Shown piece by piece: positions 3,308 to 51,568 of a stretch of 64,000 bases of DNA. A program made the position numbers and the translations under genes. Position 1 is the stretch's first letter; every line of letters begins with the position of its first letter. The notes beneath the pieces are model-generated. The model had not been told where the DNA came from. It saw nothing but the letters and a program-made list of their open reading frames with translations, and ran no database searches. Source of the stretch: Asterias rubens (Eukaryota); contig NC_047067.1 in the NCBI RefSeq assembly GCF_902459465.1, forward strand, positions 5,456,001 through 5,520,000. Direction: 5' to 3'.

Positions 3308-4351
3308 ATGAATTCTACAAGTGAAACTCGACCTTCAAACACAGCAGTGGTTGTTTTACGGACGATATTCATCGCTGCTAATGGTTTAGCAATCGTCATC
3401 GCTAACACCCTGAATATAGTCGTGGCTGGACGGGCACGGATCGGCTCAGAGCCCGCACGAGTTTTCATCGTGTCCCTCGCCTTGGCTGATATCCTCGTGG
3501 GTGCGTTGGCGTTCACTAGCACCCTGCCGTCTGGTTTTGACGGATTTCCGTTTAGCGATGCCTTGTGCCGAATAACAGGGTCAGTTTTCGCAGTTGGGCT
3601 GCTGCTTAGCGTCTTCTTCTTGGTCAATATAAGTGTGGATCGCTTCGTTGCTATAACCATACCACTAAGGTACAAGGCTCTCATTACACGCAAACGAGCA
3701 ATCATAATAGTGTGTGTCGCATGGGTCGCCATTTCTGGTATTATCTTGGTAACTACTTTACTTACGGACGTTATGAAGTACAACCATGCTACATTCTTCT
3801 GTGAGCCTTCTTTTGAAGATCCAAGTTTTCCTCTGTCTTTGTTTATATTGATCATGTGGTGGTTAATGAATGGGAGTCTGATCATGATGATGATAAACGG
3901 GCATCTTTTCCGAGTGGCTCATCACCACTCCAAGATTATCGCGTCCCAGGGTCTTGCCACAGTGATGGAGCCCAACAAACGACAGAGACCACAACGGTGG
4001 AGTCGCGTTGCTCGGACGGACTTAAAAGCCTTAAAGATGTGCCTTGCTGTAACCCTCGCCTTCAACTGTGCATGGATCCCCACTGTGTGCCTGGACTTTT
4101 ACAAATTCATCAAGAAAGAGAATGCGGCTCCTGCGGTCGAGTTTGCCGTCACCTGGTTGTCGCTGTCCAATAGTTGGTGGAACTTTCTCATCTACAGTTG
4201 TTTGAACAAACAATTTCGGAAAGCCGCAAAGCAGATTGGCAAGCGCCTCTTGGCGAAGTGTAGACGGGATAAGACAAGCCGCCAAACGGTAGGGCAGACC
4301 TCCAAAGTGTCGATATCGAGCAAGTTGAAGATTGCTGGGAATGACAATTGA
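3308..4351 (+). CDS. Intronless class A (rhodopsin-like) GPCR, 347 aa, orphan or chemoreceptor-like
   Basis: Single ORF with 7 hydrophobic segments. N-terminal NST glycosylation site, TM2 SLALAD, TM3 Cys...SVDRFVAITIPLRY, ECL2 Cys, TM6 AWIP, TM7 SNSWWNFLIY, helix 8 NKQFRKA. Confidence 0.95.
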   Translation: MNSTSETRPSNTAVVVLRTIFIAANGLAIVIANTLNIVVAGRARIGSEPARVFIVSLALADILVGALAFTSTLPSGFDGFPFSDALCRITGSVFAVGLLLSVFFLVNISVDRFVAITIPLRYKALITRKRAIIIVCVAWVAISGIILVTTLLTDVMKYNHATFFCEPSFEDPSFPLSLFILIMWWLMNGSLIMMMINGHLFRVAHHHSKIIASQGLATVMEPNKRQRPQRWSRVARTDLKALKMCLAVTLAFNCAWIPTVCLDFYKFIKKENAAPAVEFAVTWLSLSNSWWNFLIYSCLNKQFRKAAKQIGKRLLAKCRRDKTSRQTVGQTSKVSISSKLKIAGNDN

Positions 4352-37010: not shown

Positions 37011-37101
37011 ATGCATGGAGGACACACGTGCCTCATTGGAGTGTTGATTTTAACCACTTGCCTGCGCTGGTCGCACGGCCAAGCAACCCAACCGTCCAAA
37101 G
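37011..37101 (+). CDS. COLQ: ColQ-like coding exon 1 (signal peptide)
   Basis: [30 protein letters not shown]. Acceptor TTCTTTCAG ends at 36964; donor G|GTACGT; phase 1. Confidence 0.8.
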
Positions 37102-40100
37102 GTACGTTTGTAGGAGTATTCTTCAAAATATAATTAGCTGGCAAATAGTATTGGCCATTTTTTTATTTATTTTTTTATAGATATGGTGGACACCATGGGA
37201 CAATTTCATAGAGCTGCTTATGCACAAAAAATGTTTAAGCACGGAAATAGCTCGCTTATTTTACACATGTTACTGATGGCCAAATATTCATGCCATATAC
37301 ATTGCTTGTGACTGGTATTTAGCTGTTGTTTACTTAGCCTAACAATTGAGTGGAGTCTTGGCCGGCAATCTGATTTTACTAAGCAAGGATTTTTCTCGCC
37401 AAAGCAAATTTTGTATGAAATTGGGCCCATATGAGTACGCTGTTTGGTTTGGGTGTATACAGACGGAAATACCCAATAGTATTGTGTCCATCATATCTCA
37501 AAATGGCGAACGTAATTAATTTGTTTCTTTCTTCAGTAGAAACAGCTGCTGTTGTTATCAATAGTCAGTGGTAAAAACCCAGGAATGCCACAGGTGCACC
37601 AACTAAACCATCGCCCATAGCAAACAGGGAATCAGTTTGGTTTAGTGGTGTCTTGCCTCACTTCAACTTCTGGGGCCCCGGTTCAAGTGCTACCGAGGGC
37701 GCTATGTGGATTGGGTTTTCAGTCCACCTATAGCTTGAGTAGGCCTTTATTAGTCATGTAGGGGAAACAAAGTAGAAATCACTCTCGTTTTCAGTGTTGG
37801 TTCTACATTTATAATTAAACAAATCTATTGCACAACAAGTTTACCTTGCACAATCATCTTGTGCTCTTCTCAACTATTTGTGCTGCTTGATTGAAAATTT
37901 TGTTTATATATTTAGTTGAAACTGCATCCTTTACTCCAACCTGCCTTCCTTAGTTATTTATTGATTGATAGCTAATTTAAAATGTTTTTATTCAGTCTTA
38001 AAAAATCAACTTATTTTGTTTACTTTTAAAAACCTTTTATTTCTTATGCACTTTGCCTGTGACTTCACTTCTGCACCATGATAGCTATATACAACAGAAT
38101 AAGGGTTTCACCATACCATTGAGGAGTGGAGAATCGCCCCAGTCATTGCTTGTCATAATTCCCACAGTTTTATCCAATCAGTGGATTATCCACGGACTTA
38201 ATCCAATAATCCTCTCTGAGATAATCTTGGTGTTTTTTTCTTCCCGTCAGATTATTGCGAATATGAAGGCCAAATTATACCGAATAGAGAGAAGATAGTG
38301 CTGGAGAAAGACCCTTGTGTGAGATGCCGATGTAGGGTAAGACCTTATATAATTTAAAGAGGTGTAAACTTACACTTCCTTGTGCTGTAGCGCCTAGGAT
38401 ACTTACAGGATACTCTTTCACTTTGTTTTCGAAAATCTCAGCATAAGTCTGAGATATTCTGGATAAAACCATGACCAGCACACACATGCACACCCATCCA
38501 TTGACCACTTAACCCCCTACTCCCCTGGTGGTTATATATTTTTCTTATAAAAATAGAGTTTAAAAAAAAATGTTATTATAGCGCTTAACATGGGTCAGCT
38601 TGATATGTTTTATCTCCCAGCCTAACGAGAACATATCTAAGCTGATACCTAGCAAAATTTGTGCCTTTCTTAATACCTTAAAAGAATCAGTGTTGAAAAC
38701 TTGTGGCTGTACACAGAATTAGGGTCTGTCGCATGCATTATAATATGTATTGCGCATTATTTTATCAAAATAAACCACAAGGGAAACTGACTGGGTAAAT
38801 TTTGAAATGTTTTTTGGGGTTGAACAAAGAATTGACTAGAGTGGGATTCGAACCAACGCCCTCTGGTACGTTAATCCGGAGGTCGTTGGTTCGAATTCCA
38901 CTCTAGTCAATTCTTTGTTCAACCCCAAAAAGCGCGATATTTTAATCGATTAGAAGCACTTTGTAACACAAAACGCATGACTAAAAATCTGCAATCTTTC
39001 CTACCACAAAAACAGATTAAACTGTTATGTTTTGTAGCTGTTTATTTATTGTGGCTGAATGTTTAATTGTTTATTTCTACAGGATGGGGAGCTGAAATGT
39101 CGAACCATGACTTGTCCACAACAACAATGCAAGGAACTTATCCACAAACCGGGCACATGCTGCCCTAAATGCATATGTAAGTATTACATACCCATGGGAT
39201 TTAGCTGTACAATTTTTGCAAAGTCACATATAAACATGATCTCAACACTTGATCTTCCAAAACTTTTGTTTCCAAATATTTACACAAATAGATTCCTGTA
39301 TGAGTTGAGGCAATTGTAGAAGCAAGTATTTCAATTATTTGTGTCCTCATTGCCTAAGAACAGGTACCAAAGAAAACAGTTAAAAGTAAACCATTTTCAG
39401 ATTTATCATGTTTTAAATATAGGATAGTTTACAATAAAACAATGTATAAAACTTGTTTAAGAGTTTTTAAACACACTATCTCCTCCATTCATTCCAGCAT
39501 CACGCACAAACAGACATAAAGCCAGCAATAAATTCAAAGATGTCGCAATGACGATGGGCCTTGATATCGTTACTGATGGCTTGACGGTCGTCACAGTTCG
39601 ACTCCCACCACCCCCCATGATACCCCCTCCTCCCCCATCCATGCTCGCAGCAATGATTGCAAATAATACCGACTTATTGCCGATGTTTACCACAACGACG
39701 ACGACGACGACTACGGTGGATTTACCTACTGAAGAACCAGCCACGATTATATCGCCAAGAACCACCAGGATGACCCGGGCACCACCGACGCCCCCACCCA
39801 CACCACCACCACCATCACCGGTCACAAGAACAACAAAGGTTAGTATTGTTCTGACTGAGTTACTGTGCTTGTTTGTATGTTTGTCTTTTTGTCGAGTCAA
39901 GATCATCTCAACAAACAAACAGTAACTCAGTCAGTCACTAGAAATTTGATTTTTACTGATTGGAGTGTGGGCTTGAGACCCGATTGTGACACTTTTATCC
40001 TTGAGCAAGACACTTTACTATAAAAAACATGCTACCGATTGGTGTATAGGGCCTACCTTATCTCTTTTTCTACCTCCATGCTCAGATGGAACCCTCATCT

Positions 40101-43100
40101 TCCAATGAGGGTAGCTGGTTCCGAAGCAGGAAATCTAAAGTCATTGTCACATAAGGCAATTTATTAGCAACCAGTTCCAGGCAACATCTAAGAAGAAAAG
40201 TTTGGCATATAAATTTTCACCTATTTTTCTTGTGGATCAGAGGACAATGTTCGAAAAATGACTTGTGTCCTTTCTAAGGGGTCCAGTAGCATGCACTTCA
40301 GTTGGTTGCCTTCAAGATGCATGTAAAAGTTACCTTGTGTGACAAGGCCCTTATGGTTTTAAGTATCTTTGTCAAATAAACTATATAGGTTAGGATAACC
40401 CTTTACTTTGATTGAAGGCCTCATTGCCCAATGAGGGTAGCTGTTTCCCAACCAGGAATCCTGATTTGTCATAATGTTGGTGTGTTTGAAATCTTCATAA
40501 AAAAATTAAGATAAATAATTTATTTTGCATGTTTCATGTCAACTTGTTTATTTGCTTTGCTTTGCCAATGTATCAAAACCCCAATCTGTGCTTTTGTTTT
40601 TGATTCTGTTTGCATGCTGTCTTATTTTAAAGATTAAACCTACCCCAAAGCCCAGACCCACCAGGCGACCCCAAAAACCCACAGAACCGTGCATGAAAGG
40701 TGAACCAGGAACAAGTGGGGTCAAAGGTGAAACGGGTGCCCCTGGATCCCCAGGCATGCAGGTACATTTTTCTCTAAGGCTGTCATGTAAATTTATTTGC
40801 TCTTCTCGTGCATCTTCCTCCTCCTCATCATAATCTACATCAAGTCTCTCTCCATTCCTTGCTTGTTATACTTCTTCATGTTTCCCTCCCTCTTTTGATT
40901 GTCCTTCATGGTCAAACCCATCTCCGTTCTTTTTGGCCACACTCAGTGTCTTAATTTTGTACGCAATATGCAAACCCCATGTCCTCTTCACTTTCCTTAT
41001 TATAAAGATGTGAATTTTTTTTCAAATCCTGAATTGATAACTTTTAACATTGAGATTTTACCCTTTTTTTAAGACACTGCAAGTTTTAATGGGTTAAGTA
41101 TGGGTTAAGATTTCTTTTATTTGTGAAATTTTTTAAAAGCACACTTTTTTTCCAGACACAAGGCAAGAGGTCCACTTACCTAATAGCTCAGAAATACTCA
41201 AATTATATGTACAATCACAAAAGAAATTCCCTTGATTTTTTTTTTAAATCCCACTATCACTAGCTAAAGCCACTTACCAGATGAGATGAGGGCTACATGC
41301 CAATATAAAAAAGAGAGAAGATGCCTGTAGATATTAAACTTTAATAGATTGTAAGATGCTTGGAAAACAGGTATGGAGGTCCAAAGTGAGGCAGTAAAAG
41401 GTGAAGAGCCAGTAGATTACCTCACAATACTGACATTTAGAAAAGATACCAAAAAGGGACAAGAAGAGGCAAAATTATAGAGGATTTGAAGAATAACTTG
41501 AACTGATAAAAAGCAAATTCAAACAAACTTTGCTAACCCGTAGAATGTTCTTACTTGTTGGGGATACAAACAACTATCCCCACCACCAATGAATATTTGG
41601 TTTACAAGTATAGAAATTACACTAATATGTAGAAACAATTATTCTGTCAGAGTATTTTCCTAAACTTAATAGTGGAGGAAGCCAGTCAGTAACTGAACGA
41701 TATACGTAATACATGCTTCTCCTTTTTGTTTGACTCACTAAAAACCAGCACTTCAAAACAGAATTTATAAAAACACATCTTATTCAAAACATAACCCAAG
41801 AAGAAGACAAAAAAATGAAATAAATAATTGAATTAATAAAGAGTAAAAAAAACAATTTAAAAAAGTTAAACAACAAGTAAATTAAACATTAATTACAAAA
41901 TAAAAATGAACAGTAAAAATATTACAATACATACAAAGTAACAAAAAACATTAACAAATAACCAAATAAAATGACAGGTTAAATTTTATTTACCGAACAG
42001 CTCAGAAAAGTTCCAATATGTACAATTATTTTAAAATAAACCACTGATTTGTATTTTAATTCCTACTCTCGCAAGCTTAAGCCACTTGCCAGCCATGCCA
42101 ACACTATTTGTAAAACCCTTAACGTGGCCACCACCCGAATCAGAAATTATAATAAGCACCACATATAAAAATTATCCTTGGAAATATTTTGGAGGCTTAT
42201 GTATTTTGAAATTCAATTAGCGCTGGAGTGCAGTCGCAATCTGTTCAGCTGAAACACGCAGGTTATCCACGGATACAGATGGATGCCGATCAAACTTCTG
42301 ACATTTGACCCTCGCTAGATTGAATTAATAAAAATTGTCTACAGTCAATCCCCTCCCCTCTTGGCATGTTGATAACACAATTATTATTATACGACCTACG
42401 ACTATGATGGGGAACGAATGAAATTAGTGCCTGAATAATTTTGGAAAATTAATCTTTGGTTCAGTTCTTGAAGACAACTGGGATTAAGTCACTGCAAAAA
42501 GAATCAATGAAACTATTAAAAAACAGCAAAAAAAAGAGCAAAATTTCTCTGCATTTAAATTCAATACAAGTCTGTATAGTGATTGTCCCCCCCCCCGACT
42601 TTACAATGTATTTACAAGATTTGCTTTGATTTTAAAGAGTTGCCTCTTTAACTGTTCCTAACTCTTTGTTCCTTACCCTTCCTATATTATCATTGCTATC
42701 ATATTTAACAAATTATTATTTTGATTGCATTAAATCTCAAACTAAATTGTTTGCTTTTTCATGATCCCCTGTCCCTGAATACAGCCCATTCAAACAGCAT
42801 AAAATACAATCCCACACAACTAATATTTTTTGGGCTTAAGGAAACAAAATGTAGGTAAGCCCAATATAATTATGCTTACCAGAAGAAAGTTATTAGCTAA
42901 AGAACCATGTCACACATGTCATCAGTGACTGATACCCTGCTCATTTTAGCTTAGCAGAAATTTGTAAGCAATAATTTGTACTGAAGTTGCTCTGTGAAAT
43001 TGTGGATGTATGTTTGGAGCTCTATCAAAAAAAAACAAAAAAAACACCTGCTGCAAGGTTTTAATGAATTTTTAATAATGTTGTATAATAGGATGGCTGG

Positions 43101-46100
43101 TTGTGTTTTAATTTTAGGGTCCGAATGGTACCCCGGGACCTACAGGGCCAACAGGATTGAAAGGAGACACAGGGGAACCAGGACCCCAGGTAAATCAAGT
43201 TTGTGTCAAGTACATAGATACTAAGTGACATATATTCTCATAAATTTACAATCTTTTCAAAAGATTTTCCAAAGTCTTACGTCAGACTTTGTCTTAATTA
43301 AGACAGACTTTGTGAGTCTTAAGTCAGACTCTATGAGTTAACTGTTAACTTAAAGGCACTGAACACGTTTGGTAATTGTCAAAGACCAGTGTTCTCACTT
43401 GGTGTATCCCATCATAAGCCTAAAATAACCAGCCTGTGAAAATTTGGGCTCAAACGGTCATCGAAGTTGCGAGAAAATGATGAAAGAAAAAACACCCTTG
43501 TTGGACGAATTTGTGTGCTTTCAGATAGGAATAAAAGACTTCTAGCTTGAAGTCTTTTATTATTTTAGTGAGAAATAACCAAACGTGTACCTTCCCTTTA
43601 ATACTTTAATTGGTTAATCAAAGTCACTTGAAAACTGTATAAAAGTGTTGATTTAATTTAAGTTGCTGCTTTAAGAGTCTAGGCCTACATAAATATTACA
43701 GTAAAAAAATGGGTTCATTTTTACCTTCCCGGCTAAAAACTGGAGTAACCTTTCTGAAAGGGGACAATGTGTCAGAGGGCCAGACGAGTCCATGACTCAA
43801 CAGACAACATCATCAGCATCATATAGCATCCCTTGACAACTCAGTCTCATCTCTAGTCTCAAGAGACAATTAAAAACCTGTACAAGATCATCTCTTTCCT
43901 TAATGCCAGACAGAGGGGAACTGGTTGAACTTAGTTGAAAACAACTGGGATATAGAGAGATGAGTAGTGGTGATGAAATAATGTAGCTGGAAGTTCACTA
44001 AGTGTCAGATTTGTAGAGCGATGACCACACTGTTCGACTCCGAAATTAATTTCCCGGTATACATCTAGAAAGCTTTTCCTAAGAGCTTTATTTTGACAAG
44101 TATAAAAGGTTTTTTTTGCACTAACTTAGCATGACCTTCATATTCTAAATCAGCAGAGCATTCATATACTTCATTTTGTCTTTATATTGTTTCAAGTCTT
44201 AGTATTAATTGACCTAGGGATCATACTATATCTTTATCATGCATTTTCACTGTATCATGCATTTGCGCATTATCATGGAGGTTTGCAAGCAATTAGTATA
44301 AGTTTTGAAGGGTATTAACTCCACTACAGGAGCGTTATAACTCCTCAGAATGTCACATCTATTTGTAACTTATTATTTATTCATTAACAATTATAGGACT
44401 GATACTTTGTTCTTGTAAGGACTAAGCAGTTTTTCATAATTAAAGGGCGTTTGTACTTTTTGTAGGAAAAAAAAAAACACAATGTCCACAGATCTACACT
44501 AAACTTACACAGTTTAAAGACAATGATAGTAGAAAGCTTCCCTGAAAATATTACGTGCTGAGGTGCTGTAGTTTTGGGGAAATGAGTAAAACAATGTCAT
44601 GAAAATAATTTTGGTCTCATGAGACCAAAATTATTTTAAGCATTTACAAACGTATTTTAATGACATTGTTTTACTCATTTCTCAAAAACTGCAGCACCTC
44701 AGTAAGTAATATTTGAAGGGAAGCTTTCCACTATCATTATCTGCAAACCCTGTAGGTTTAATGTAAATCTATCAACATTTTGAAAAAATCCTTTAAGGGC
44801 ACCTTAATGAAGGAAATGCAAATTAATTTTGTAACATTTAAAGGAACACGTTGTCTATAAAAAGCGTTTGAAACCGTTTGTTATGAAATGTATATGGTTA
44901 GAAAGATGTTTTAAGAGTAGAATATAATGATCCACACAAGTATTACTCAAAGTTGCACGGTTTTCTTTTTACGTCGCGAACTATCACGGTCGGCCATTTA
45001 TGGGAGTCAAAATTTTGACTCCCTAAATGGCCGACCGTGTTATTGGACGAGGTAATAAGAAAACCACACAATTTCGAGGCATGTTTGTGTGGATCATTGT
45101 ATTCTACTTTTACATCATCTTTCTAACCATATGCATTTTATAACAAAAACGGTCACAAAACGCATTTCAAAGACCAACTCGACCGATCCAAGGCAACGTG
45201 TTTCTTTAAAGGGCACAAAGGCAATGACCAGGGCCATGAAAGCAACTACCATCATTGTCTTCTAGAAGTATCAGGCCTGTATGTTGTTTGTAGGTTGATT
45301 CTAAACCTTGTTTGTTTTTCTTGTTTTTATCATCATCAGGGTCCAAAAGGTGACACAGGACCTAAGGGTGAACGGGGTCTTCCGGGCCCAAGAGGGCCAA
45401 CTGGACCAAAAGTGAGTCTTTCAAATATGAGTTCTCTCCCATCCATATCCCAAAAAGGATAGGTGGGGGCGAAAGAAACAACAAATCCAAAACAACAGCA
45501 CACAACACCTAGCATCCCCAAGTGTAGAACTTCAAAAAATGAAAAGGAATGTCAGCCTTAGTGTTATGGATAGCCATATGATATTAGCCTAGATACAAAT
45601 TTCTACTTCTAGGTGAGGGGAAGCAATCATGGAGCATGTTTTCTTAGTACCTGTATTTAAATCAGAATAAACATCCAGTTCCACACAAGTGTTATTTACT
45701 GTCCTGAAATACAAAGTTAGTGATGAGATAGACACCTGGGCTCAATTTCATAGAGCTACTAAACCAGACAATTTTGCCTGAAACATTTTCTGCTTAGCAA
45801 AAATAAACAGGATATCATTTACAGATTATTCTTAATTCATGTGACATGGTAGTTTTGTCGGTAACCTTATTGTGGTAGGTATAATTTTGTTGTACTTAGC
45901 TGCATTTTGGGCTATAGGTAGCTCTATGAAATTAGGCCCTGGTAGTTATTGTTATTTTAACTTACAGGTGAGCCTTTGGGAAAGACTTTGCTTGGGTCTA
46001 AATGTTACGTCACTTTATGCATTTTGCTGTAGGTAGTTTTAGCATAGAAAAAGGACTGTGGTCCTTTCTCTGTGGTTTTAGTAAAAGTGAGCAGTTTGCA

Positions 46101-49100
46101 ACAGCTAATTTTCCCTTCATTTTTCAATATTTATCTTTTGTTATAATTTACTATCTGTAGGGATCGTTTGGTATGCCTGGACCCAGAGGACATTCTGGAA
46201 AGAAAGGCCCTAAAGGAAATACTGGAAGGAAAGGAAGAAAGGTAAAATATATTTTACAGTTTTTGTTTTTAAAACCTGAAAAAACCCCACATGCAGTTCT
46301 AAAATCAACCAACATTTGTTACAGTTAGGAAAAGAACATAACAATGTTAATCCACTCTTGAGATGGAAGTATAGACCCCTTGTACACGAGCCCCAAACCA
46401 CGCCCTCACTGAGGTCAATGAAGAATTTTCATTGGCCGAGAGTAGTGCGCAGCGCATACATGCCTGCAAGTTTCCATTGTTTGAACTCAGCGATGGTGAC
46501 CGATGCAAGACTTCTTTTTATATTTTCTTTAACTCTGATATTCTTTCACCTGCTACTCACCAAGATTATGCTACCAGTTAGAATTTTCAGAACCGAGTAA
46601 AAACATTATATTTATACAGAGCTTAAAAGCACTGTATTCTCTGTACCTTCCCGAGTCCTCTGAGACAGATCCACCGGCAAATCTCCTCGGGTGGGATTCA
46701 AACCCGGGACCTTTGCACAGCGAGTTAAAATACTTATCAAGGATTAATTTTGTTACATTTTTTATATTTTTATTTAACTCTGATGTTTTTTCACTTGCTA
46801 TATTCACTTTTAAGATGATGCTGCAATTTGTTTATCCCTTGAACAAAGTCAATAATTTTTGTATTAAGCACAGTACTTTCCCCAAGTTCTCTGAAAGAAA
46901 TCCACAGGCAGTCCTATCAGGTGGGACCTTTGCATAGCAACTCAAAAATACAAAATTTTGTTCCCATTTTGATTCAGGGTGATCCAGGGGAGAGAGGTCC
47001 AGTGGGTCCAGAGGGAATCCAAGGACTTCCCGGCCACGTTGGCTTGCCCGGGCCAATGGGACCACCAGGAAACAGTAAGCAGTTAGTTACTCAATTAAAG
47101 ATGCTATGTCAGATTTTTGGCCGATTTGACCCAACAATTTTGATTTAAAATTCAATAGGTATTTTAATGGGGGTCGAGAAAGTTACAAGCTTTCATTTGA
47201 GCCATTGCTCGAAAAAGTCCGCCAATTATTAGTAGCAGTGAAATAAAGTGCTCAAAATTAGTTTTTGTCGGGATCCCGACAATATATCACGTGACCAATT
47301 CTTATGTGTTTTATAAGAAACGTTTTAAATTTTTGTCATGGTTCCTGACCATTAAAAGTAAAAGTTAAACTGTTTTTCGTTAGAGCGCGTGATAATCTTT
47401 GAAATACAATTCACTCAAAAATATATATTTTTTAATGTTTGGGGCCAAAAATCTGACATATCATCTTTAATAAGAGCAGTGTCCTCTTTACATGAACTGG
47501 ATACCTTTGGTAATTGTCCAAGAACAGTATTCTCACATGGTGTAGGCCTATCCCAACATAGCCTATGCATAAAAATAACAAAATCTGTGAAAATTTTGCT
47601 CAATTGGTCATTGAAGTTGCAAGGGAATAATGAAAGAAAAATCACCCTTGTTGCACAAATTTTGTGCTTCAGGTCCAAAAAAAGGTTTAGGCCTTCCTTC
47701 TTTCTCAGATTCAGATACTTTAAAATATTTGAATCTAAGAAAGACTGTTTTATACTACCAACAGCTCTCCGTTGCTTGTTAATACAAATTAAGTCTTAAT
47801 GCTAACAATTATTTTGAGTAATTACCAATAGTGTCTGGTGCCTTTTTAACAAATACTTGATTTCCATTTAAATTGAATCTTATTGCTTTTACAAACTTTC
47901 TTGATGATTATTCAGATGCTGGAGGAGTTGAAGGGCCAAGGGGACCTGTTGGGCCGCCGGGTCTACCTGGGTTGCAGGGTCCTTCTGGTAAACTAGGTCC
48001 ACAAGGGGTCAAAGGTGAAAAGGGAGACCCTGGTAACAAGGTCATGGAAGGGGTAAGTCATATTTAGACAGAAAGATCAGTTGTGTATATTTGGTACATT
48101 TTGCATTTTTTGTATATTCTGCATAGTTTTCCTTGTTTTGCATATTCTGTATATTATATCTTGAGTATTTTGTATACTATTTTGCATACTTTTGGGAATT
48201 CATTTTGCACATTTTGTATATTTTGCATTTTATGTACTAATTTTGAAAATTGTGCATAATGTGTATTTTCAAATATTGCATATTTTGTATTTTTGTATAC
48301 TATGAATAGTTTTGCATTTGTATTGTGTATATGTTTTGTATTTCTTGCATTTTTGTTCATTAGGGCCTACTAAAGAAAAACTTTATTTACAAAATAATTT
48401 ATTGAATCTAAGCAAAAACTTAACGAATCTATGCGAGTTGCAAGACACTTAGAAAGTTTGTTTATTAACCGTTCATTAATTCCAGTAAAAGATGTTTGAC
48501 CCTCTTTCCCTTTTTCCCTCCATCCCCCCAGCAAATAGTCATTGTGCCCAATGAGATCGCTATGCAGACAATCCGTGCAGAAGCAGCCATCGTCTATCGG
48601 ACAGATGTGAAAAAACTCTATTTCAGAGACACGGACGAGTGGAATTGTTTAATGGTCGAGGATAGCACAAAGGTCGTCACAGGTCCCCCTGGACCCCCAG
48701 GACCTCCTGGAGAAATGGGACCCACTGGTCCACAGGGACCAAAAGGGGAGACGGGGGACATGACGGAGCCGGATGATAAGGATGACAATAGTGTAAGGGT
48801 TAGGTTTCTTTGTATTGATATACTTTATACACGGTGTCATGGCCGATTGATTTAGCGCATCAAATTCAAGTTCTGGTGCAGGCCTGTATGCTTCGTTTTT
48901 GAAAGGGCAAGGGCACCAAGGCATTTTCTCCTTGGTAAAGGGCCCCTATGAGGACATTGAATATTTCTACTGGAGCATTTTAAGGGCACCAAGGCACTGA
49001 CCAGTGGGCAAGGAGGCAATCACCTCCAATGCCTTCGTAAAGTGTCAAGCCTGCTGGTGGTTTAGTCATCGGGGTAAGGGTTCTAATCCCTGAAAAAAGC

Positions 49101-51568
49101 AGGTCAGGTTTGTTCTCAACATTTAAAACAAACCCTCTGCTCGTCTTCTTCTCCTAAAGATGAGCAGAGTACTGTTTGAAATGTTAAGATCAAACCAGCT
49201 CTTTTCAGAGCCAACACTTCCTCAAAGTTGATTCAATACATGGTTGTACCCGCAAGTTTACTGTTATTTCTAGTTTATTCTTAATATGCACATCATGCAA
49301 AGCAACTTATTTTCTTGTGGCACAGTGATTTTAGTCATTCGCCCCCTATGGCATTGACTTCATAAGAACATGCTGCATTCCACACAGCGAGTTTTAAACT
49401 AACCATCAGACTCATGCATTTCTACTCGTTTTGATTTTTCAGATTTGTGGAAATGCTATCTTAGAGGGGAAGGAAGAATGTGATGATGGAAACTTTATAC
49501 ACACAGACAGTTGCATCAGTAAGTGACTTTTCCCTTCTGCTGCTTTTTATTCAACAGTATCTTCTGGTATACAGTTTTTCTTTGTCGTTTCCTTCCTTCA
49601 TTATACAGGTCAAGTCACTTCACCATGAGCATCCTCAGTTGGATATCTGCACATTATAGTGTGTCCTCATTATTATTTTTGTTTATGGTTCATATTTTAT
49701 TGTGAACTTTGTAAATGCTTTATTGTACCTGTACATTGTCATTGCGACAGACGTCTTCGAACTACTACATTGTAGTTAACATCTATTATACATTGTAGTT
49801 GCATTGCTTTTTACTGTATTAAGCCCGGTTCATACTTCCTGCGAATGCGAATGCGAAGCGAATGTTGACGTCACAACAATCGCAAGGAATATTCGCAGCA
49901 GTTCAGCTCCGTTCACCTCACTTGCGAATATCGCTGCGAAAGGATAGTTGTGACGTCAAATTCACGTCAAATTCGCTTCGCATTCGCATTCGCAGGAAGT
50001 ATGAACCGGGCTTTAGGGTGTTCTTTCACCTTTTTTGTCAATAAGGCTTTGATTTCTATTTTGCTTCTTTTTACTGGTGTACTTTTTCTTAAACTTTTGC
50101 TGTGTTTTTTTCTTATGACATTTTTACTGTTATGCGCCCTCGAACAGGCTGGTCCTGGAGAGAGCGCAGTATAAAGTCAATAAATGAGTATTATCATGGT
50201 AATTATATTCTTTTTAGACTGTATGAGATCATTCTGTGGAGACACCTACAGACAACAAGGAGTAGAAGAGTGCGATACGCTTGACTTCAACGGAAAAACA
50301 TGCGATTCCTATTTTACAGAGTGAGTATCAATACCTCAAAACAAAAACCCATCCCATGCTAAAATCTGTTGGAATACTTACATACATTTAAGTTGATAGT
50401 TACTGCCTCCAAACTATTCACTTAAATTATAAAGAACAGAAATAATAGTTTATGTGGTTTTGTTTTATCTTATGGCATGATACACATTATTTTTGTTGTT
50501 GTATTAAACTTGTGCCAGAGGCTTTGATTGTGATCATGCCATCTTCCTTGTGTGATTGAATGATGTATACATTTTGTCTGCCAAGGTCCTTTGTCGAACC
50601 ACAGCTTTGGCACTTGCTTAGACTCTGGCTTAAGCTCTGATCTTGGCTTAGGTTCTGTCAATTATTTTGTTAAATGTATGCTTTATGTCCAGGGCTTCAA
50701 ACAGACAGACAGAGCCTAAACCAAACCCCAAGCTGAAGCTGTGATTTTAAGAAAAGAGCAAAATTTTGTTTCCCTTCCTCGCTCAGATGAATTTACAGGT
50801 TTTGTGTATAGAGCTAGGCCTTTTTATTTTCTATTTTGTGAGTGTTTGTTCATATTTAACACATTTGTTTTGCAATAGCCTACAGTATTTCTTTCTGTAT
50901 CGACTACATTTTTCTTTCTTGTCTCTACTGTCTAACTTTAACTTCTCTTTTTTTTCATCTCAAAGCGCATAGAGATTTTTCTATGATTGTGATATGCGCT
51001 ATACAAGAATGGTTCATTATTATTATTATATTGTACCTCCCTTGGTTCTGTTTGTGGATGTTCATTGTTCGTTATTACAAATTGACGTTTATATAAACCT
51101 GCAGGGTTGCTGAACAACTATTTATAATTTTAAGTTTTGAAGTTTGTTAATTTATATTTGTTTACTTTAATTTGTATTTTTCAGACTATTTTGAAGTATG
51201 AAACTATTCTATCAGGGCTGATAGGCTTAATTATTTGTATTGCTGACTTTTGGATGCTTTTTATCATTAAATAATATTATTAATATTTTAACGTTCTACT
51301 TGTAATGATGAAAATGATGCTCGGCAGGGATAAGCTGGAATTAGTGAAAACAAACCTTTCTTTCATACATTTTGACATTTGTGATCAAGAATAAGAAAAG
51401 AATAAGATAGTTAACCTTTAACTCTCAAGATTATCTCTTGACAGATACGAGACAATGGGCGTCTTGAGGTGTACAGACCGCTGCAGGATTGATACTGGTA
51501 ACTGTAAAGTAGTCCGACGGAGAAGGCGACAGCTATCACCCTATCAAATCCCTCCGCCAGAAAAGTAA
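37011..51568 (+). CDS. COLQ: ColQ-like secreted collagen (AChE collagenic tail family), 14 coding exons, 587 aa
   Basis: Hand-spliced with GT-AG introns and consistent phases: 37011-37101, 38251-38336, 39083-39176, 39498-39838, 40633-40761, 43118-43189, 45340-45411, 46161-46241, 46978-47074, 47916-48052, 48532-48792, 49443-49518, 50218-50320, 51445-51568 (1764 nt). Domain order: signal peptide, vWC, PRAD-like, Thr/Pro stalk, PCMKG, about 56 Gly-X-Y triplets with one interruption, [23 protein letters not shown], 9 more triplets, [33 protein letters not shown]...[15 protein letters not shown]. This matches the human ColQ C-terminus as I recall it (CGDG..ECDDGN..DDCIRCHRAYCGDG..GVEDCDGSDF..TCETY..GDLQCTQYCYIDSTPC). 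Confidence 0.88.
38251..38336 (+). CDS. COLQ: ColQ-like exon 2 (vWC N-half)
   Basis: [29 protein letters not shown]; CCGTCAG| and |GTAAGA. Confidence 0.88.
38811..38931. repeat. Inverted repeat of two SINE-like B-box segments
   Basis: 48-bp arms (38811-38858 and 38884-38931) with one mismatch. Confidence 0.9.
39083..39176 (+). CDS. COLQ: ColQ-like exon 3 (vWC C-half)
   Basis: [31 protein letters not shown]; |GTAAGT. Confidence 0.9.
39498..39838 (+). CDS. COLQ: ColQ-like exon 4 (PRAD-like motif and Thr/Pro stalk)
   Basis: Open frame SRTNRHK...[13 protein letters not shown]...T9...[19 protein letters not shown]; TTCCAG| and |GTTAGT. Confidence 0.85.
40633..40761 (+). CDS. COLQ: ColQ-like exon 5 (start of collagen domain)
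   Basis: [43 protein letters not shown]; |GTACAT. Confidence 0.9.
43118..43189 (+). CDS. COLQ: ColQ-like exon 6 (8 Gly-X-Y)
   Basis: 72 bp, [24 protein letters not shown], phase 0/0. Confidence 0.92.
43350..43601 (-). mobile_element. Family A subfamily (TTAAAGGGAAGGTACACGTTTGG terminus)
   Basis: TTAA ends; same subfamily as 57008-57425. Confidence 0.8.
44440..44796. mobile_element. MITE family B
   Basis: TTAAAGGG...CCTTTAA with a loopless central palindrome. Confidence 0.87.
44838..45209. mobile_element. TTAA-flanked MITE (TTAAAGGAACACGTTG TIR)
   Basis: Right end CAACGTGTTTCTTTAA; internal inverted repeats. Confidence 0.8.
45340..45411 (+). CDS. COLQ: ColQ-like exon 7 (8 Gly-X-Y)
   Basis: 72 bp, [24 protein letters not shown]; |GTGAGT. 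Confidence 0.92.
46161..46241 (+). CDS. COLQ: ColQ-like exon 8 (9 Gly-X-Y, basic cluster)
   Basis: 81 bp, [27 protein letters not shown]. Confidence 0.92.
46978..47074 (+). CDS. COLQ: ColQ-like exon 9 (collagen)
   Basis: [32 protein letters not shown]; |GTAAGC; phase 1. Confidence 0.92.
47480..47849 (-). mobile_element. Family A-related degenerate copy
   Basis: Ends GAGTAATTACCAATAGTGTCTGGTGCCTTTTTAA. Confidence 0.7.
47916..48052 (+). CDS. COLQ: ColQ-like exon 10 (collagen end)
   Basis: (N)[45 protein letters not shown]; |GTAAGT. Confidence 0.9.
48080..48355. repeat. Low-complexity TTTTGCAT/TTTGTAT repeat tract
   Basis: Short T-rich motif repeated many times in a ColQ-like intron. Confidence 0.75.
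48532..48792 (+). CDS. COLQ: ColQ-like exon 11 (trimerisation-type segment plus extra 9 Gly-X-Y)
   Basis: [40 protein letters not shown]...[27 protein letters not shown]...NS. Donor |GTAAGG; an alternative phase-0 donor lies 6 nt downstream. Confidence 0.87.
48879..49053 (+). mobile_element. Family H, about 175-bp element with CAGGCCTG-like ends
   Basis: Core AAGGGCAAGGGCACCAAGGCATTTTCTCCTTGGTAAAGGG; also at 14228-14397(-), 21082-21227, 52735-52913, 63643-63815(-) and partials near 31655-31760 and 45210-45280. Confidence 0.8.
49443..49518 (+). CDS. COLQ: ColQ-like exon 12 (Cys-rich repeat 1)
   Basis: [25 protein letters not shown]; |GTAAGT. Confidence 0.92.
49822..50012. mobile_element. PIF/Harbinger-type MITE
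   Basis: 42-bp perfect TIR AGCCCGGTTCATACTTCCTGCGAATGCGAATGCGAAGCGAAT; TTA target duplication on both sides. Confidence 0.88.
50218..50320 (+). CDS. COLQ: ColQ-like exon 13 (Cys-rich repeat 2)
   Basis: [34 protein letters not shown]; |GTGAGT. Confidence 0.92.
51445..51568 (+). CDS. COLQ: ColQ-like terminal exon 14
   Basis: [41 protein letters not shown]; candidate AATAAA at 52381. Confidence 0.9.

What the first reader, a model, noticed from the sequence alone, without database searches (positions are those of the whole stretch)
37011..51568. A complete ColQ-type (acetylcholinesterase anchor) collagen gene in an invertebrate, with a non-vertebrate architecture
Seen: a 14-exon secreted collagen with, in ColQ order, a polyproline motif, the EPCMKG junction (SPCMQG in human ColQ as recalled), a triple helix with a basic cluster, the IVIVPNE..LYFRD..W segment and the full ColQ-type Cys-rich C-terminus. 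Established: vertebrate ColQ anchors AChE/BChE tetramers to synaptic basal lamina through PRAD, binds heparan sulfate/perlecan through the helix, and binds MuSK through the C-terminal domain. Collagen-tailed asymmetric AChE is generally regarded as a chordate feature. Inference: this animal may have a ColQ-based system for anchoring cholinesterase in extracellular matrix, for example at neuromuscular or neurally controlled connective-tissue sites. That would push the system back beyond chordates.
Basis: partly seen in the sequence, partly recalled or inferred. Interest (0 to 1): 0.82.

Follow-up and report, generated by a model that had tools for sequence, protein, structure and literature searches.

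The report
Sea-star version of the ColQ collagen
This sea star (Asterias rubens) has an intact gene for the collagen that in vertebrates ties the nerve-signal-ending enzyme acetylcholinesterase to the matrix; the enzyme-docking proline motif is kept, but public databases already name the gene and its job in sea stars is untested.

Summary
Window 37011-51568 (+) holds a 14-coding-exon gene. Its exons reproduce exactly two RefSeq proteins of Asterias rubens, "acetylcholinesterase collagenic tail peptide-like" isoforms X1 and X2. The C-terminal domain aligns along its whole length with vertebrate ColQ: all 10 cysteines are invariant, and the four best Swiss-Prot fold matches are ColQ. Single-copy relatives occur in all five echinoderm classes, two acorn worms, amphioxus and vertebrates, and their tree follows the species tree. 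So this is a ColQ orthologue.

The layout differs from vertebrates: an N-terminal VWC domain, no Cys-Cys pair before the proline motif, a second 9-triplet mini-helix, and a polybasic tail. The EPCMKG exon is skipped in both RefSeq isoforms.

- The block LPPPP[M/I][I/T]PPPPPS is the only conserved island between VWC and helix in 12 ambulacrarians, and it resembles the chordate PRAD.
- The IVIVPNE..LYFRD..W module folds like the collagen XV/XVIII trimerisation domain. A sponge collagen carries the same C-terminal domain followed by endostatin.

Binding to a cholinesterase could not be tested here. No paper in the library describes ColQ in echinoderms. Moderately interesting; not a new gene discovery.

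The parts
37011..37101 (+). Exon 1: start codon and signal peptide ([23 protein letters not shown]|QATQPSK); ends in phase 1
   Evidence: identical to the N-terminus of RefSeq P0001
38251..38336 (+). Exon 2: first half of the VWC domain ([15 protein letters not shown])
   Evidence: Pfam VWC on residues 33-89, 32 bits, cut-off 27.6; conserved in 12 ambulacrarians
39083..39176 (+). Exon 3: second half of the VWC domain ([30 protein letters not shown])
   Evidence: VWC, E 2e-4 on the exon alone
39498..39838 (+). Exon 4: linker, PRAD-like motif, N-glycosylation sequon (NNT), then a Thr/Pro-rich mucin-like spacer with a second proline run ([11 protein letters not shown])
39602..39637 (+). PRAD-like motif [12 protein letters not shown]. 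It is the only conserved island between the VWC domain and the helix.
   Evidence: [RT]L[PL]PPP[MI][IT]PPPPPS is invariant or nearly so in 12 echinoderm and hemichordate proteins; same position and pattern as the chordate PRAD.
40633..40761 (+). Exon 5: probable cassette exon (129 nt, phase 0/0) encoding a basic Pro-rich stretch, the EPCMKG junction cysteine and the first 7 Gly-X-Y triplets
   Evidence: Good AG/GT sites and an open frame. Skipped in RefSeq X1 and X2. The homologous exon is included in Patiria miniata isoform X2. The junction resembles vertebrate ColQ.
43118..43189 (+). Exon 6: collagen helix, 24 residues
45340..45411 (+). Exon 7: collagen helix, 24 residues
46161..46241 (+). 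Exon 8: collagen helix with the basic cluster [15 protein letters not shown], a candidate heparan-sulfate binding site (BBXB type)
   Evidence: Comparable clusters are seen in the relatives' helices (sequences).
46978..47074 (+). Exon 9: collagen helix; ends in phase 1 at the single helix interruption (GPPGN|NAGGVEG)
   Evidence: S. purpuratus shows the same 36+13-triplet split.
47916..48052 (+). Exon 10: last 13 triplets of the main helix plus VMEG
   Evidence: Donor at 48052 fixed by identity to P0001. VMEG/LMEG is conserved in Acanthaster and Patiria.
48532..48792 (+). Exon 11: proximal C-terminal (trimerisation) module [22 protein letters not shown], then a 9-triplet mini-collagen and an acidic linker
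   Evidence: 33% identity to the shark ColQ module, E 7e-10. AF2 pLDDT 92-95. Best PDB matches are the collagen XV/XVIII trimerisation domains.
49443..49518 (+). Exon 12: first Cys-rich DUF4215 repeat ([23 protein letters not shown])
   Evidence: Pfam DUF4215, 27.7 bits, cut-off 27; invariant Cys columns in A1
50218..50320 (+). Exon 13: second Cys-rich repeat ([33 protein letters not shown])
   Evidence: invariant C114, C119, C131, C141
51430..51568 (+). Exon 14: final Cys loop ([14 protein letters not shown]), polybasic tail RRRRR and stop codon. Acceptor 51430 gives isoform X1; acceptor 51445 gives X2, which lacks LSLDR.

Best explanation
This is the sea-star orthologue of ColQ, the collagen tail subunit of asymmetric acetylcholinesterase.

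Shown here:
- It is a secreted protein with, in order: signal peptide; VWC domain; a proline-rich docking motif ([13 protein letters not shown]); a Thr/Pro-rich spacer; a collagen helix of 150-170 residues with a basic cluster; a small beta-alpha-beta module with the fold of the collagen XV/XVIII trimerisation domain; a 9-triplet mini-helix; and a 10-cysteine distal domain.
- The last two non-collagen modules are homologous residue by residue to the proximal and distal C-terminal domains of vertebrate ColQ.

Inferred:
- Three chains are brought together by the proximal C-terminal module, which nucleates the helices on both sides of it.
- Each chain's proline motif forms a polyproline-II rod. 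Four tryptophan-rich (WAT) C-terminal helices of a cholinesterase-type esterase wrap around it in the secretory pathway, giving up to three enzyme tetramers per trimer.
- The basic cluster, and perhaps the polybasic tail, bind heparan sulfate. The Cys-rich distal domain binds a matrix or cell-surface partner. Together these would fix the enzyme in the extracellular matrix.
- Without the vertebrate Cys-Cys pair, the enzyme would be held non-covalently.

My confidence is about 0.9 that it is a ColQ orthologue and about 0.45 that it tethers a cholinesterase-type enzyme.
For: - Identity and gene model: window exons equal RefSeq P0001 and P0272 of Asterias rubens.
- C-terminal homology: 30-37% identity over about 90% of the 192-residue region to amphioxus and vertebrate ColQ, E 1e-15 to 1e-19 in 5.8 billion sequences. 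There are 23 invariant columns, including all 10 Cys and W37.
- Fold: the four best Swiss-Prot AlphaFold matches are ColQ of rat, Torpedo, human and mouse.
- Orthology: one protein cluster per species in the searches. The tree recovers asteroids (100/98), vertebrates (100/98) and amphioxus with vertebrates (81/68).
- Docking motif: it is the only conserved block in an otherwise free-running region across 12 ambulacrarians. It sits at the same place as the chordate PRAD and has the same P4-5/two hydrophobic/P3-5 pattern.
- Trimerisation module: pLDDT 92-95. Top PDB matches are 3n3f, 3hsh and 3hon, with TM by target 0.58-0.66, rmsd 1.6-2.2 A and Z 5.2-5.9 over 50 of 53-56 residues. In human ColQ the matching stretch is called the C-terminal trimerisation domain (PMC10671321).
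- Basic cluster in the helix.
- From memory, not tested here: polyproline peptides of loose sequence are enough to organise WAT tetramers. Examples are the PRAD/WAT crystal structure, synthetic polyproline, and lamellipodin peptides in plasma butyrylcholinesterase.
Against: - No cholinesterase or WAT tail was examined. The tools gave no way to fetch one from this genome.
- The Cys-Cys pair that links vertebrate ColQ covalently to two catalytic subunits is absent in all non-vertebrate relatives.
- The exon with the junction cysteine is skipped in both RefSeq isoforms.
- From memory: classical sedimentation surveys found no collagen-tailed cholinesterase in invertebrates, and Ciona showed only globular forms in vivo.
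- The VWC domain, the mini-helix and the polybasic tail have no counterpart in vertebrate ColQ and could point to a different or additional role.
- The distal-domain model is poor (pLDDT 44-80).
Confidence: 0.6

Rival explanations
1. It is a ColQ-family matrix collagen whose sea-star role has nothing to do with cholinesterase. The VWC domain would bind BMP/TGF-beta-type ligands, as in procollagen N-propeptides. The collagen would be a basement-membrane or connective-tissue scaffold, and the proline block would be a rigid spacer or a docking site for another extracellular partner. On this view, recruitment of cholinesterase is a later chordate or vertebrate innovation that came with the Cys-Cys pair.
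For: - The VWC domain is conserved in all ambulacrarian relatives and absent in chordates.
- The Cys-Cys pair is found only in vertebrates.
- No collagen-tailed enzyme has been reported from invertebrates (from memory).
- A sponge collagen carries the same C-terminal domain with no proline motif. So the C-terminal domain is older than any PRAD.
Against: - The near-invariance of 13-14 residues over the whole of Ambulacraria, together with the matching motif at the same place in amphioxus and vertebrates, is hard to explain by a spacer role.
- No other extracellular partner of such a motif is known to me.
Confidence: 0.3
2. It works like ColQ, but its cargo is not the synaptic acetylcholinesterase. 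It would tether tetramers of WAT-tailed carboxylesterase-like enzymes of other specificity in the matrix.
For: Two unchecked first-reader notes of this scan on the same genome (s1-150621, s1-178761) report tandem secreted esterases that keep a WAT exon but lack the choline-binding tryptophan.
Against: Those notes were not verified by anyone, and I could not read the sequences. Nothing here speaks to substrate specificity.
Confidence: 0.1

Closest known systems
Vertebrate ColQ (collagen tail subunit of asymmetric acetylcholinesterase; Torpedo, rat, human)
   Same: - Order of parts: signal peptide, proline-rich docking motif, cysteine at the helix start, a helix of about 50-60 triplets with basic clusters, proximal trimerisation module, and a distal domain with the same 10 cysteines.
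- The best sequence and fold matches are ColQ.
   Different: - An N-terminal VWC domain.
- No Cys-Cys pair before the proline motif.
- A long Thr/Pro spacer.
- The junction cysteine lies in an exon that the RefSeq isoforms skip.
- A 9-triplet mini-helix between the two C-terminal modules.
- A polybasic RRRRR tail after the last cysteine.
- Cholinesterase binding is untested.
Multiplexin collagens XV/XVIII (trimerisation domain, PDB 3n3f, 3hsh, 3hon)
   Same: - The IVIVPNE..LYFRD..W module has the same small fold and the same position directly after a collagen helix.
- A sponge (Oscarella pearsei) collagen joins a ColQ-type C-terminal domain to an endostatin domain.
   Different: - The sea-star protein has no endostatin domain. 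The N-terminal thrombospondin-like domain that I recall for multiplexins was not looked for specifically; the Pfam scan reported only Collagen, VWC and DUF4215.
- Sequence identity to the solved domains is only 12-20%, and no sequence-level match was found in the PDB search.
PRiMA (proline-rich membrane anchor of brain acetylcholinesterase)
   Same: A short polyproline docking motif presented in the secretory pathway (from memory).
   Different: PRiMA is a small transmembrane protein without collagen. Nothing else is shared. Not compared by sequence here.
Fibrillar procollagen N-propeptides with a VWC domain (for example type IIA procollagen)
   Same: A 10-Cys VWC domain ahead of a collagen helix.
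   Different: No fibrillar C-propeptide, a helix of about 50 triplets instead of about 340, and a ColQ-type C-terminus.

Membership tests
ColQ | Distal C-terminal domain with 10 conserved cysteines (two CGxGxxExxEECDDGN-type repeats plus a terminal C..C......C loop) | tested here: met
   Alignment A1: all 10 Cys and the E/D/G/N columns are invariant in 23 sequences from sea star to birds. Pfam DUF4215: 27.7 bits on exon 12 alone (cut-off 27) and 24.2 bits on whole P0001, the same marginal level as amphioxus and shark ColQ.
ColQ | Proximal C-terminal (trimerisation) module directly after the helix | tested here: met
   33% identity and E 7e-10 to the shark module. R23, D25, L29, Y30 and W37 are conserved. 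Confident fold. The region is called the trimerisation domain in human ColQ (PMC10671321).
ColQ | Proline-rich attachment domain (PRAD) N-terminal to the helix | tested here: met
   [13 protein letters not shown] lies 66 residues (X1) or 88 residues (with exon 5) before the helix. It has the same pattern and position as FPPPPIPPPPPPT (amphioxus) and PPPPP[LMI][FHL]PPP (vertebrates). It is an island of conservation. Only sequence pattern and position were tested, not binding.
ColQ | Cys-Cys pair just before the PRAD, for disulfide links to catalytic subunits | tested here: not met
   Absent in all echinoderm, hemichordate, amphioxus and unknown (Logan) relatives; present in all vertebrates examined. 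It is therefore a vertebrate feature, not a family-wide one.
ColQ | Short collagen helix (about 50-60 triplets) with heparan-sulfate-type basic clusters and a cysteine at its N-terminal junction | tested here: met
   49 triplets, or 56 with exon 5 (shark 57+5, Ptychodera 56). Cluster [16 protein letters not shown]. The junction Cys is present only with exon 5.
ColQ | Orthology: groups with ColQ, one copy per genome, tree follows the species tree | tested here: met
   (126 columns, sponge as outgroup). All named non-echinoderm collagen hits covering about 90% of the region are ColQ or ColQ-like, apart from one sponge collagen; the short-coverage hits are bacterial DUF4215 repeat proteins or plain collagens. 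The deep branches are weakly supported.
ColQ | Assembles with tetramers of cholinesterase T (WAT-tailed) subunits into collagenase-sensitive asymmetric forms | not testable with these tools
   No esterase of this genome could be fetched. Only unchecked scan notes exist.
Multiplexin (collagen XV/XVIII) | C-terminal endostatin domain (and, from memory, an N-terminal thrombospondin-like domain) | tested here: not met
   Pfam finds only Collagen, VWC and DUF4215 in P0001. Endostatin is found in the sponge protein P0161 only.
Fibrillar procollagen | Fibrillar C-propeptide and an uninterrupted helix of about 1000 residues | tested here: not met
   Helix of 149-170 residues; no such domain in Pfam.

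The most novel reading that the evidence does not exclude
Collagen-tailed esterase anchoring arose at the base of deuterostomes, not in vertebrates. On this reading, echinoderms and hemichordates use this VWC-bearing ColQ to hold non-covalently bound tetramers of WAT-tailed cholinesterase-type enzymes in the extracellular matrix. Candidate sites are the basal lamina between nerve and muscle and the nerve-controlled mutable connective tissue. ColQ itself would descend from a multiplexin-like basement-membrane collagen of the kind still seen in a sponge.
Probability: 0.4. Interest if true: 0.8.

Novelty: new variant of a known kind. Interest (0 to 1): 0.55.

Why it matters
Collagen-tailed acetylcholinesterase is usually taught as a vertebrate speciality of fast neuromuscular synapses (from my memory of the field). 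A ColQ orthologue with a strongly conserved docking motif in sea stars, sea urchins, sea cucumbers, brittle stars, feather stars and acorn worms makes the origin of that system directly testable. Three tests would settle it: scan the sea-star esterases for WAT tails, co-express them with this collagen, and run gradients on tissue extracts.

The work also gives two structural leads of wider use:
- The ColQ trimerisation module shares the multiplexin fold.
- A sponge collagen links the ColQ-type C-terminus to endostatin. This suggests where ColQ came from.

What tempers it: the gene is already named in RefSeq, so the advance is in interpretation, and the key functional step remains open.

Tried and rejected
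- Exhaustive phmmer with exon 11. True relatives were found (P0001, P0016, P0024 and fragments), but the list was swamped by ordinary collagens through the mini-helix.
- Word-indexed searches with the sponge and hemichordate C-terminal regions. Both were swamped by bacterial (mostly Myxococcota) DUF4215 repeat proteins. No protostome or cnidarian ColQ-like protein appeared. That is not proof of absence, because the search needs shared 5-residue words.
- Microsynteny. A fish protein fuses HACL1 to ColQ (P0227), so the two genes are neighbours there. tblastn of it against the window hit only the ColQ exons, so there is no HACL1 within 64 kb.
- PDB sequence search with the C-terminal profile. The only hit was a weak match of the Cys-rich repeat start to the first residues of the ADAM17 disintegrin region (E 0.037). 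There was no sequence-level hit to multiplexin domains.
- BLASTP of the sea-star trimerisation module against the sponge segment found nothing. A profile of 22 deuterostome modules did find it (94.6%, E 7e-8).
- Literature: ten full-text searches found no paper on ColQ outside vertebrates. Three key papers recalled from memory (Johnson & Moore 2012; Frederick et al. 2008; Pezzementi & Chatonnet 2010) are not held.
- Rejected: pseudogene or chance ORFs (intact, conserved, matches RefSeq); fibrillar procollagen; true multiplexin.
- My first model with the exon-10 acceptor at 47934 and donor at 48040 was wrong. RefSeq and the orthologues fix it at 47916-48052.
Full report
**What is there.** The + strand between 37011 and 51568 carries a run of short open stretches with Gly-X-Y periodicity, flanked by Cys-rich stretches. 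Every junction has a canonical AG acceptor and GT donor with compatible phases, which gives 14 coding exons.

A library-wide phmmer search with exon 11 returned a 549-aa protein, P0001, as the top hit. A word-indexed search names it [quoted passage not shown]. So the window comes from a sea star. Earlier notes of this scan on the same genome also call the animal a sea star.

Concatenating the window's exons reproduces P0001 and isoform X2 (P0272) letter for letter. That check corrected my model in three places:
- Exon 10 is 47916-48052.
- The last exon has two acceptors 15 nt apart, 51430 for X1 and 51445 for X2.
- Exon 5 (40633-40761, with the EPCMKG junction and seven Gly-X-Y triplets) is skipped in both RefSeq isoforms.

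Exon 5 is nevertheless open, in phase 0/0 and well spliced. Its counterpart is included in Patiria miniata isoform X2. It adds the junction cysteine that vertebrate ColQ has at the same spot (sCmqG, tCmpG). With exon 5 the helix has 56 triplets, the same as in the acorn worm Ptychodera and close to the 57+5 of a shark. I read it as a cassette exon whose use needs RNA-seq.

**Is it ColQ?** Four lines of evidence say yes.
- The last 192 residues match amphioxus and vertebrate ColQ at 30-37% identity over about 90% of their length, with E 1e-15 to 1e-19 against 5.8 billion sequences. All named collagen hits outside echinoderms that cover about 90% of the region are ColQ or ColQ-like, apart from one sponge protein.
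- A 23-sequence alignment has 23 invariant columns, including all ten cysteines of the distal domain and the tryptophan of the proximal module.
- An AlphaFold2 model of this region finds ColQ of rat, Torpedo, human and mouse as its four best Swiss-Prot matches. Nothing else is significant.
- The searches returned one protein cluster per species in sea stars, a brittle star, sea urchins, sea cucumbers, feather stars, two acorn worms, amphioxus and vertebrates. The maximum-likelihood tree of 126 columns follows the species tree where it is resolved: asteroids 100/98, vertebrates 100/98, amphioxus with vertebrates 81/68.

Of the family features I could test, only the Cys-Cys pair before the proline motif is missing. 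It is missing in every non-vertebrate relative, so it defines vertebrate ColQ and not the family.

**How the architecture differs.** All ambulacrarian members begin with a complete 10-cysteine VWC domain (Pfam 32 bits, cut-off 27.6). Chordate ColQ lacks it. After the proline motif comes a Thr/Pro-rich stretch. Echinoderms have a 9-triplet mini-helix between the two C-terminal modules, where the acorn worm has a Cys-containing linker and chordates have a short linker. The echinoderm proteins end in a polybasic run (RRRRR or RRRKR) that chordates lack.

**The docking motif.** Between the VWC domain and the helix the twelve ambulacrarian sequences are essentially unalignable, except for one block: [R/T]-L-[P/L]-PPP-[M/I]-[I/T]-PPPPP-S. 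It is invariant or nearly so. [15 protein letters not shown] is identical in Asterias and both acorn worms. Feather stars carry two copies. The block sits where the PRAD sits in chordates and has the same design: four or five prolines, two hydrophobic residues, three to five prolines.
- Amphioxus: FPPPPIPPPPPPT.
- Two unidentified transcript-derived proteins: RFPPPPLFPPPPPS.
- Vertebrates: CC-LLxPPPPP[L/M/I][F/H/L]PPP.

Such conservation argues for a specific binding partner. From memory, the vertebrate PRAD is a polyproline-II rod around which four WAT helices of cholinesterase T subunits coil, and quite different polyproline peptides can do the same. So the sea-star block should be competent if a WAT-tailed partner exists.

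I could not test that. No esterase of this genome was reachable. Two unchecked notes of this scan report WAT-tailed secreted esterases elsewhere in the same genome. These are leads, not evidence.

**The trimerisation module and a possible origin.** The first 40 residues of the C-terminal region ([19 protein letters not shown]) are modelled with pLDDT 92-95 as a strand-helix-three-strand unit. In the PDB its best matches, by two aligners, are the trimerisation domains of collagens XV and XVIII: TM by target 0.58-0.66, rmsd 1.6-2.2 A, Z 5.2-5.9 over 50 of 53-56 residues. The scores are modest, as they must be for so small a domain. But the matches cover the whole domain and stand at the top of both lists.

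This agrees with the literature's name for the matching stretch of human ColQ, the C-terminal trimerisation domain (PMC10671321). It also explains why helices can lie on both sides of it in echinoderms.

A collagen of the sponge Oscarella pearsei (P0161) carries, after its helix, a ColQ-type proximal module (profile comparison 94.6%, E 7e-8). Next comes the ColQ-type 10-Cys domain, and then an endostatin domain (Pfam E 1.6e-25). The sponge protein has no proline motif. This suggests that the ColQ C-terminus is an old metazoan module shared with multiplexin-like collagens, and that the proline motif was added in deuterostomes. No protostome or cnidarian relative turned up, but those searches are word-limited.

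**Verdict.**
- The reading [quoted passage not shown] is supported.
- The reading "a ColQ-based cholinesterase anchor outside chordates" is plausible and now better motivated, but untested. I put it near 0.45.
- The gene is not a discovery as such, because RefSeq already names it and its relatives. I found no paper on ColQ in echinoderms in ten full-text searches.

New here are the constraint on the docking motif across Ambulacraria, the conserved VWC/mini-helix layout, the multiplexin-type fold of the trimerisation module, and the sponge link.

Noticed in passing
P0161 (Oscarella pearsei, EukProt EP00118), residues 374-702: A sponge collagen carries a ColQ-type proximal and 10-Cys distal C-terminal domain followed by an endostatin domain. 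It may link ColQ to the multiplexin collagens XV/XVIII.
   Followed up: partly
P0157 (Anneissia) residues 118 and 175; P0016 (Antedon) residues 80 and 123: Feather-star ColQ-like proteins carry two copies of the LPPPPxIPPPPPS motif, about 45-55 residues apart. Each chain could therefore dock two partners.
   Followed up: no
L001 (Logan ERR13301064, 1232-nt intronless contig) = P0236; also P0241: Two short (345-360 aa) ColQ-like proteins of unknown species have RFPPPPLFPPPPPS, a helix of only about 20 triplets and the full ColQ C-terminus. They sit on a long branch in the tree and may come from a tunicate; the source was not identified.
   Followed up: partly
window 39638-39670 and the matching positions in relatives: An N-glycosylation sequon (NNT, NET, NES, NHT) recurs 7-11 residues after the proline motif in asteroids, the ophiuroid, sea urchins and both acorn worms.
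   Followed up: no
window 51509-51532 ([10 protein letters not shown]): A polybasic run after the last cysteine is conserved in most echinoderms (RRRKR, RRKRR) and absent in chordates. It could be a furin-type cleavage site or a further glycosaminoglycan-binding tail.
   Followed up: no
window 49443-49518 (first Cys-rich repeat): A profile of the ColQ C-terminus weakly matches the first residues after the catalytic domain of ADAM17 (CGNSRVDEGEECD; E 0.037). The same repeat type (DUF4215) is very abundant in Myxococcota surface proteins.
   Followed up: partly
window 3308-4351 (+): An intronless 347-aa rhodopsin-family GPCR (Pfam 7tm_1, E 5.5e-39) lies upstream of the collagen gene.
   Followed up: partly
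window 38802-38928, both strands (intron 2 of the collagen gene): Two overlapping ORFs on opposite strands encode nearly the same peptide ([16 protein letters not shown].. and [16 protein letters not shown]..). This implies an inverted repeat, probably a small hairpin-type transposon.
   Followed up: no
Pfam found nothing on this piece.
   Followed up: no
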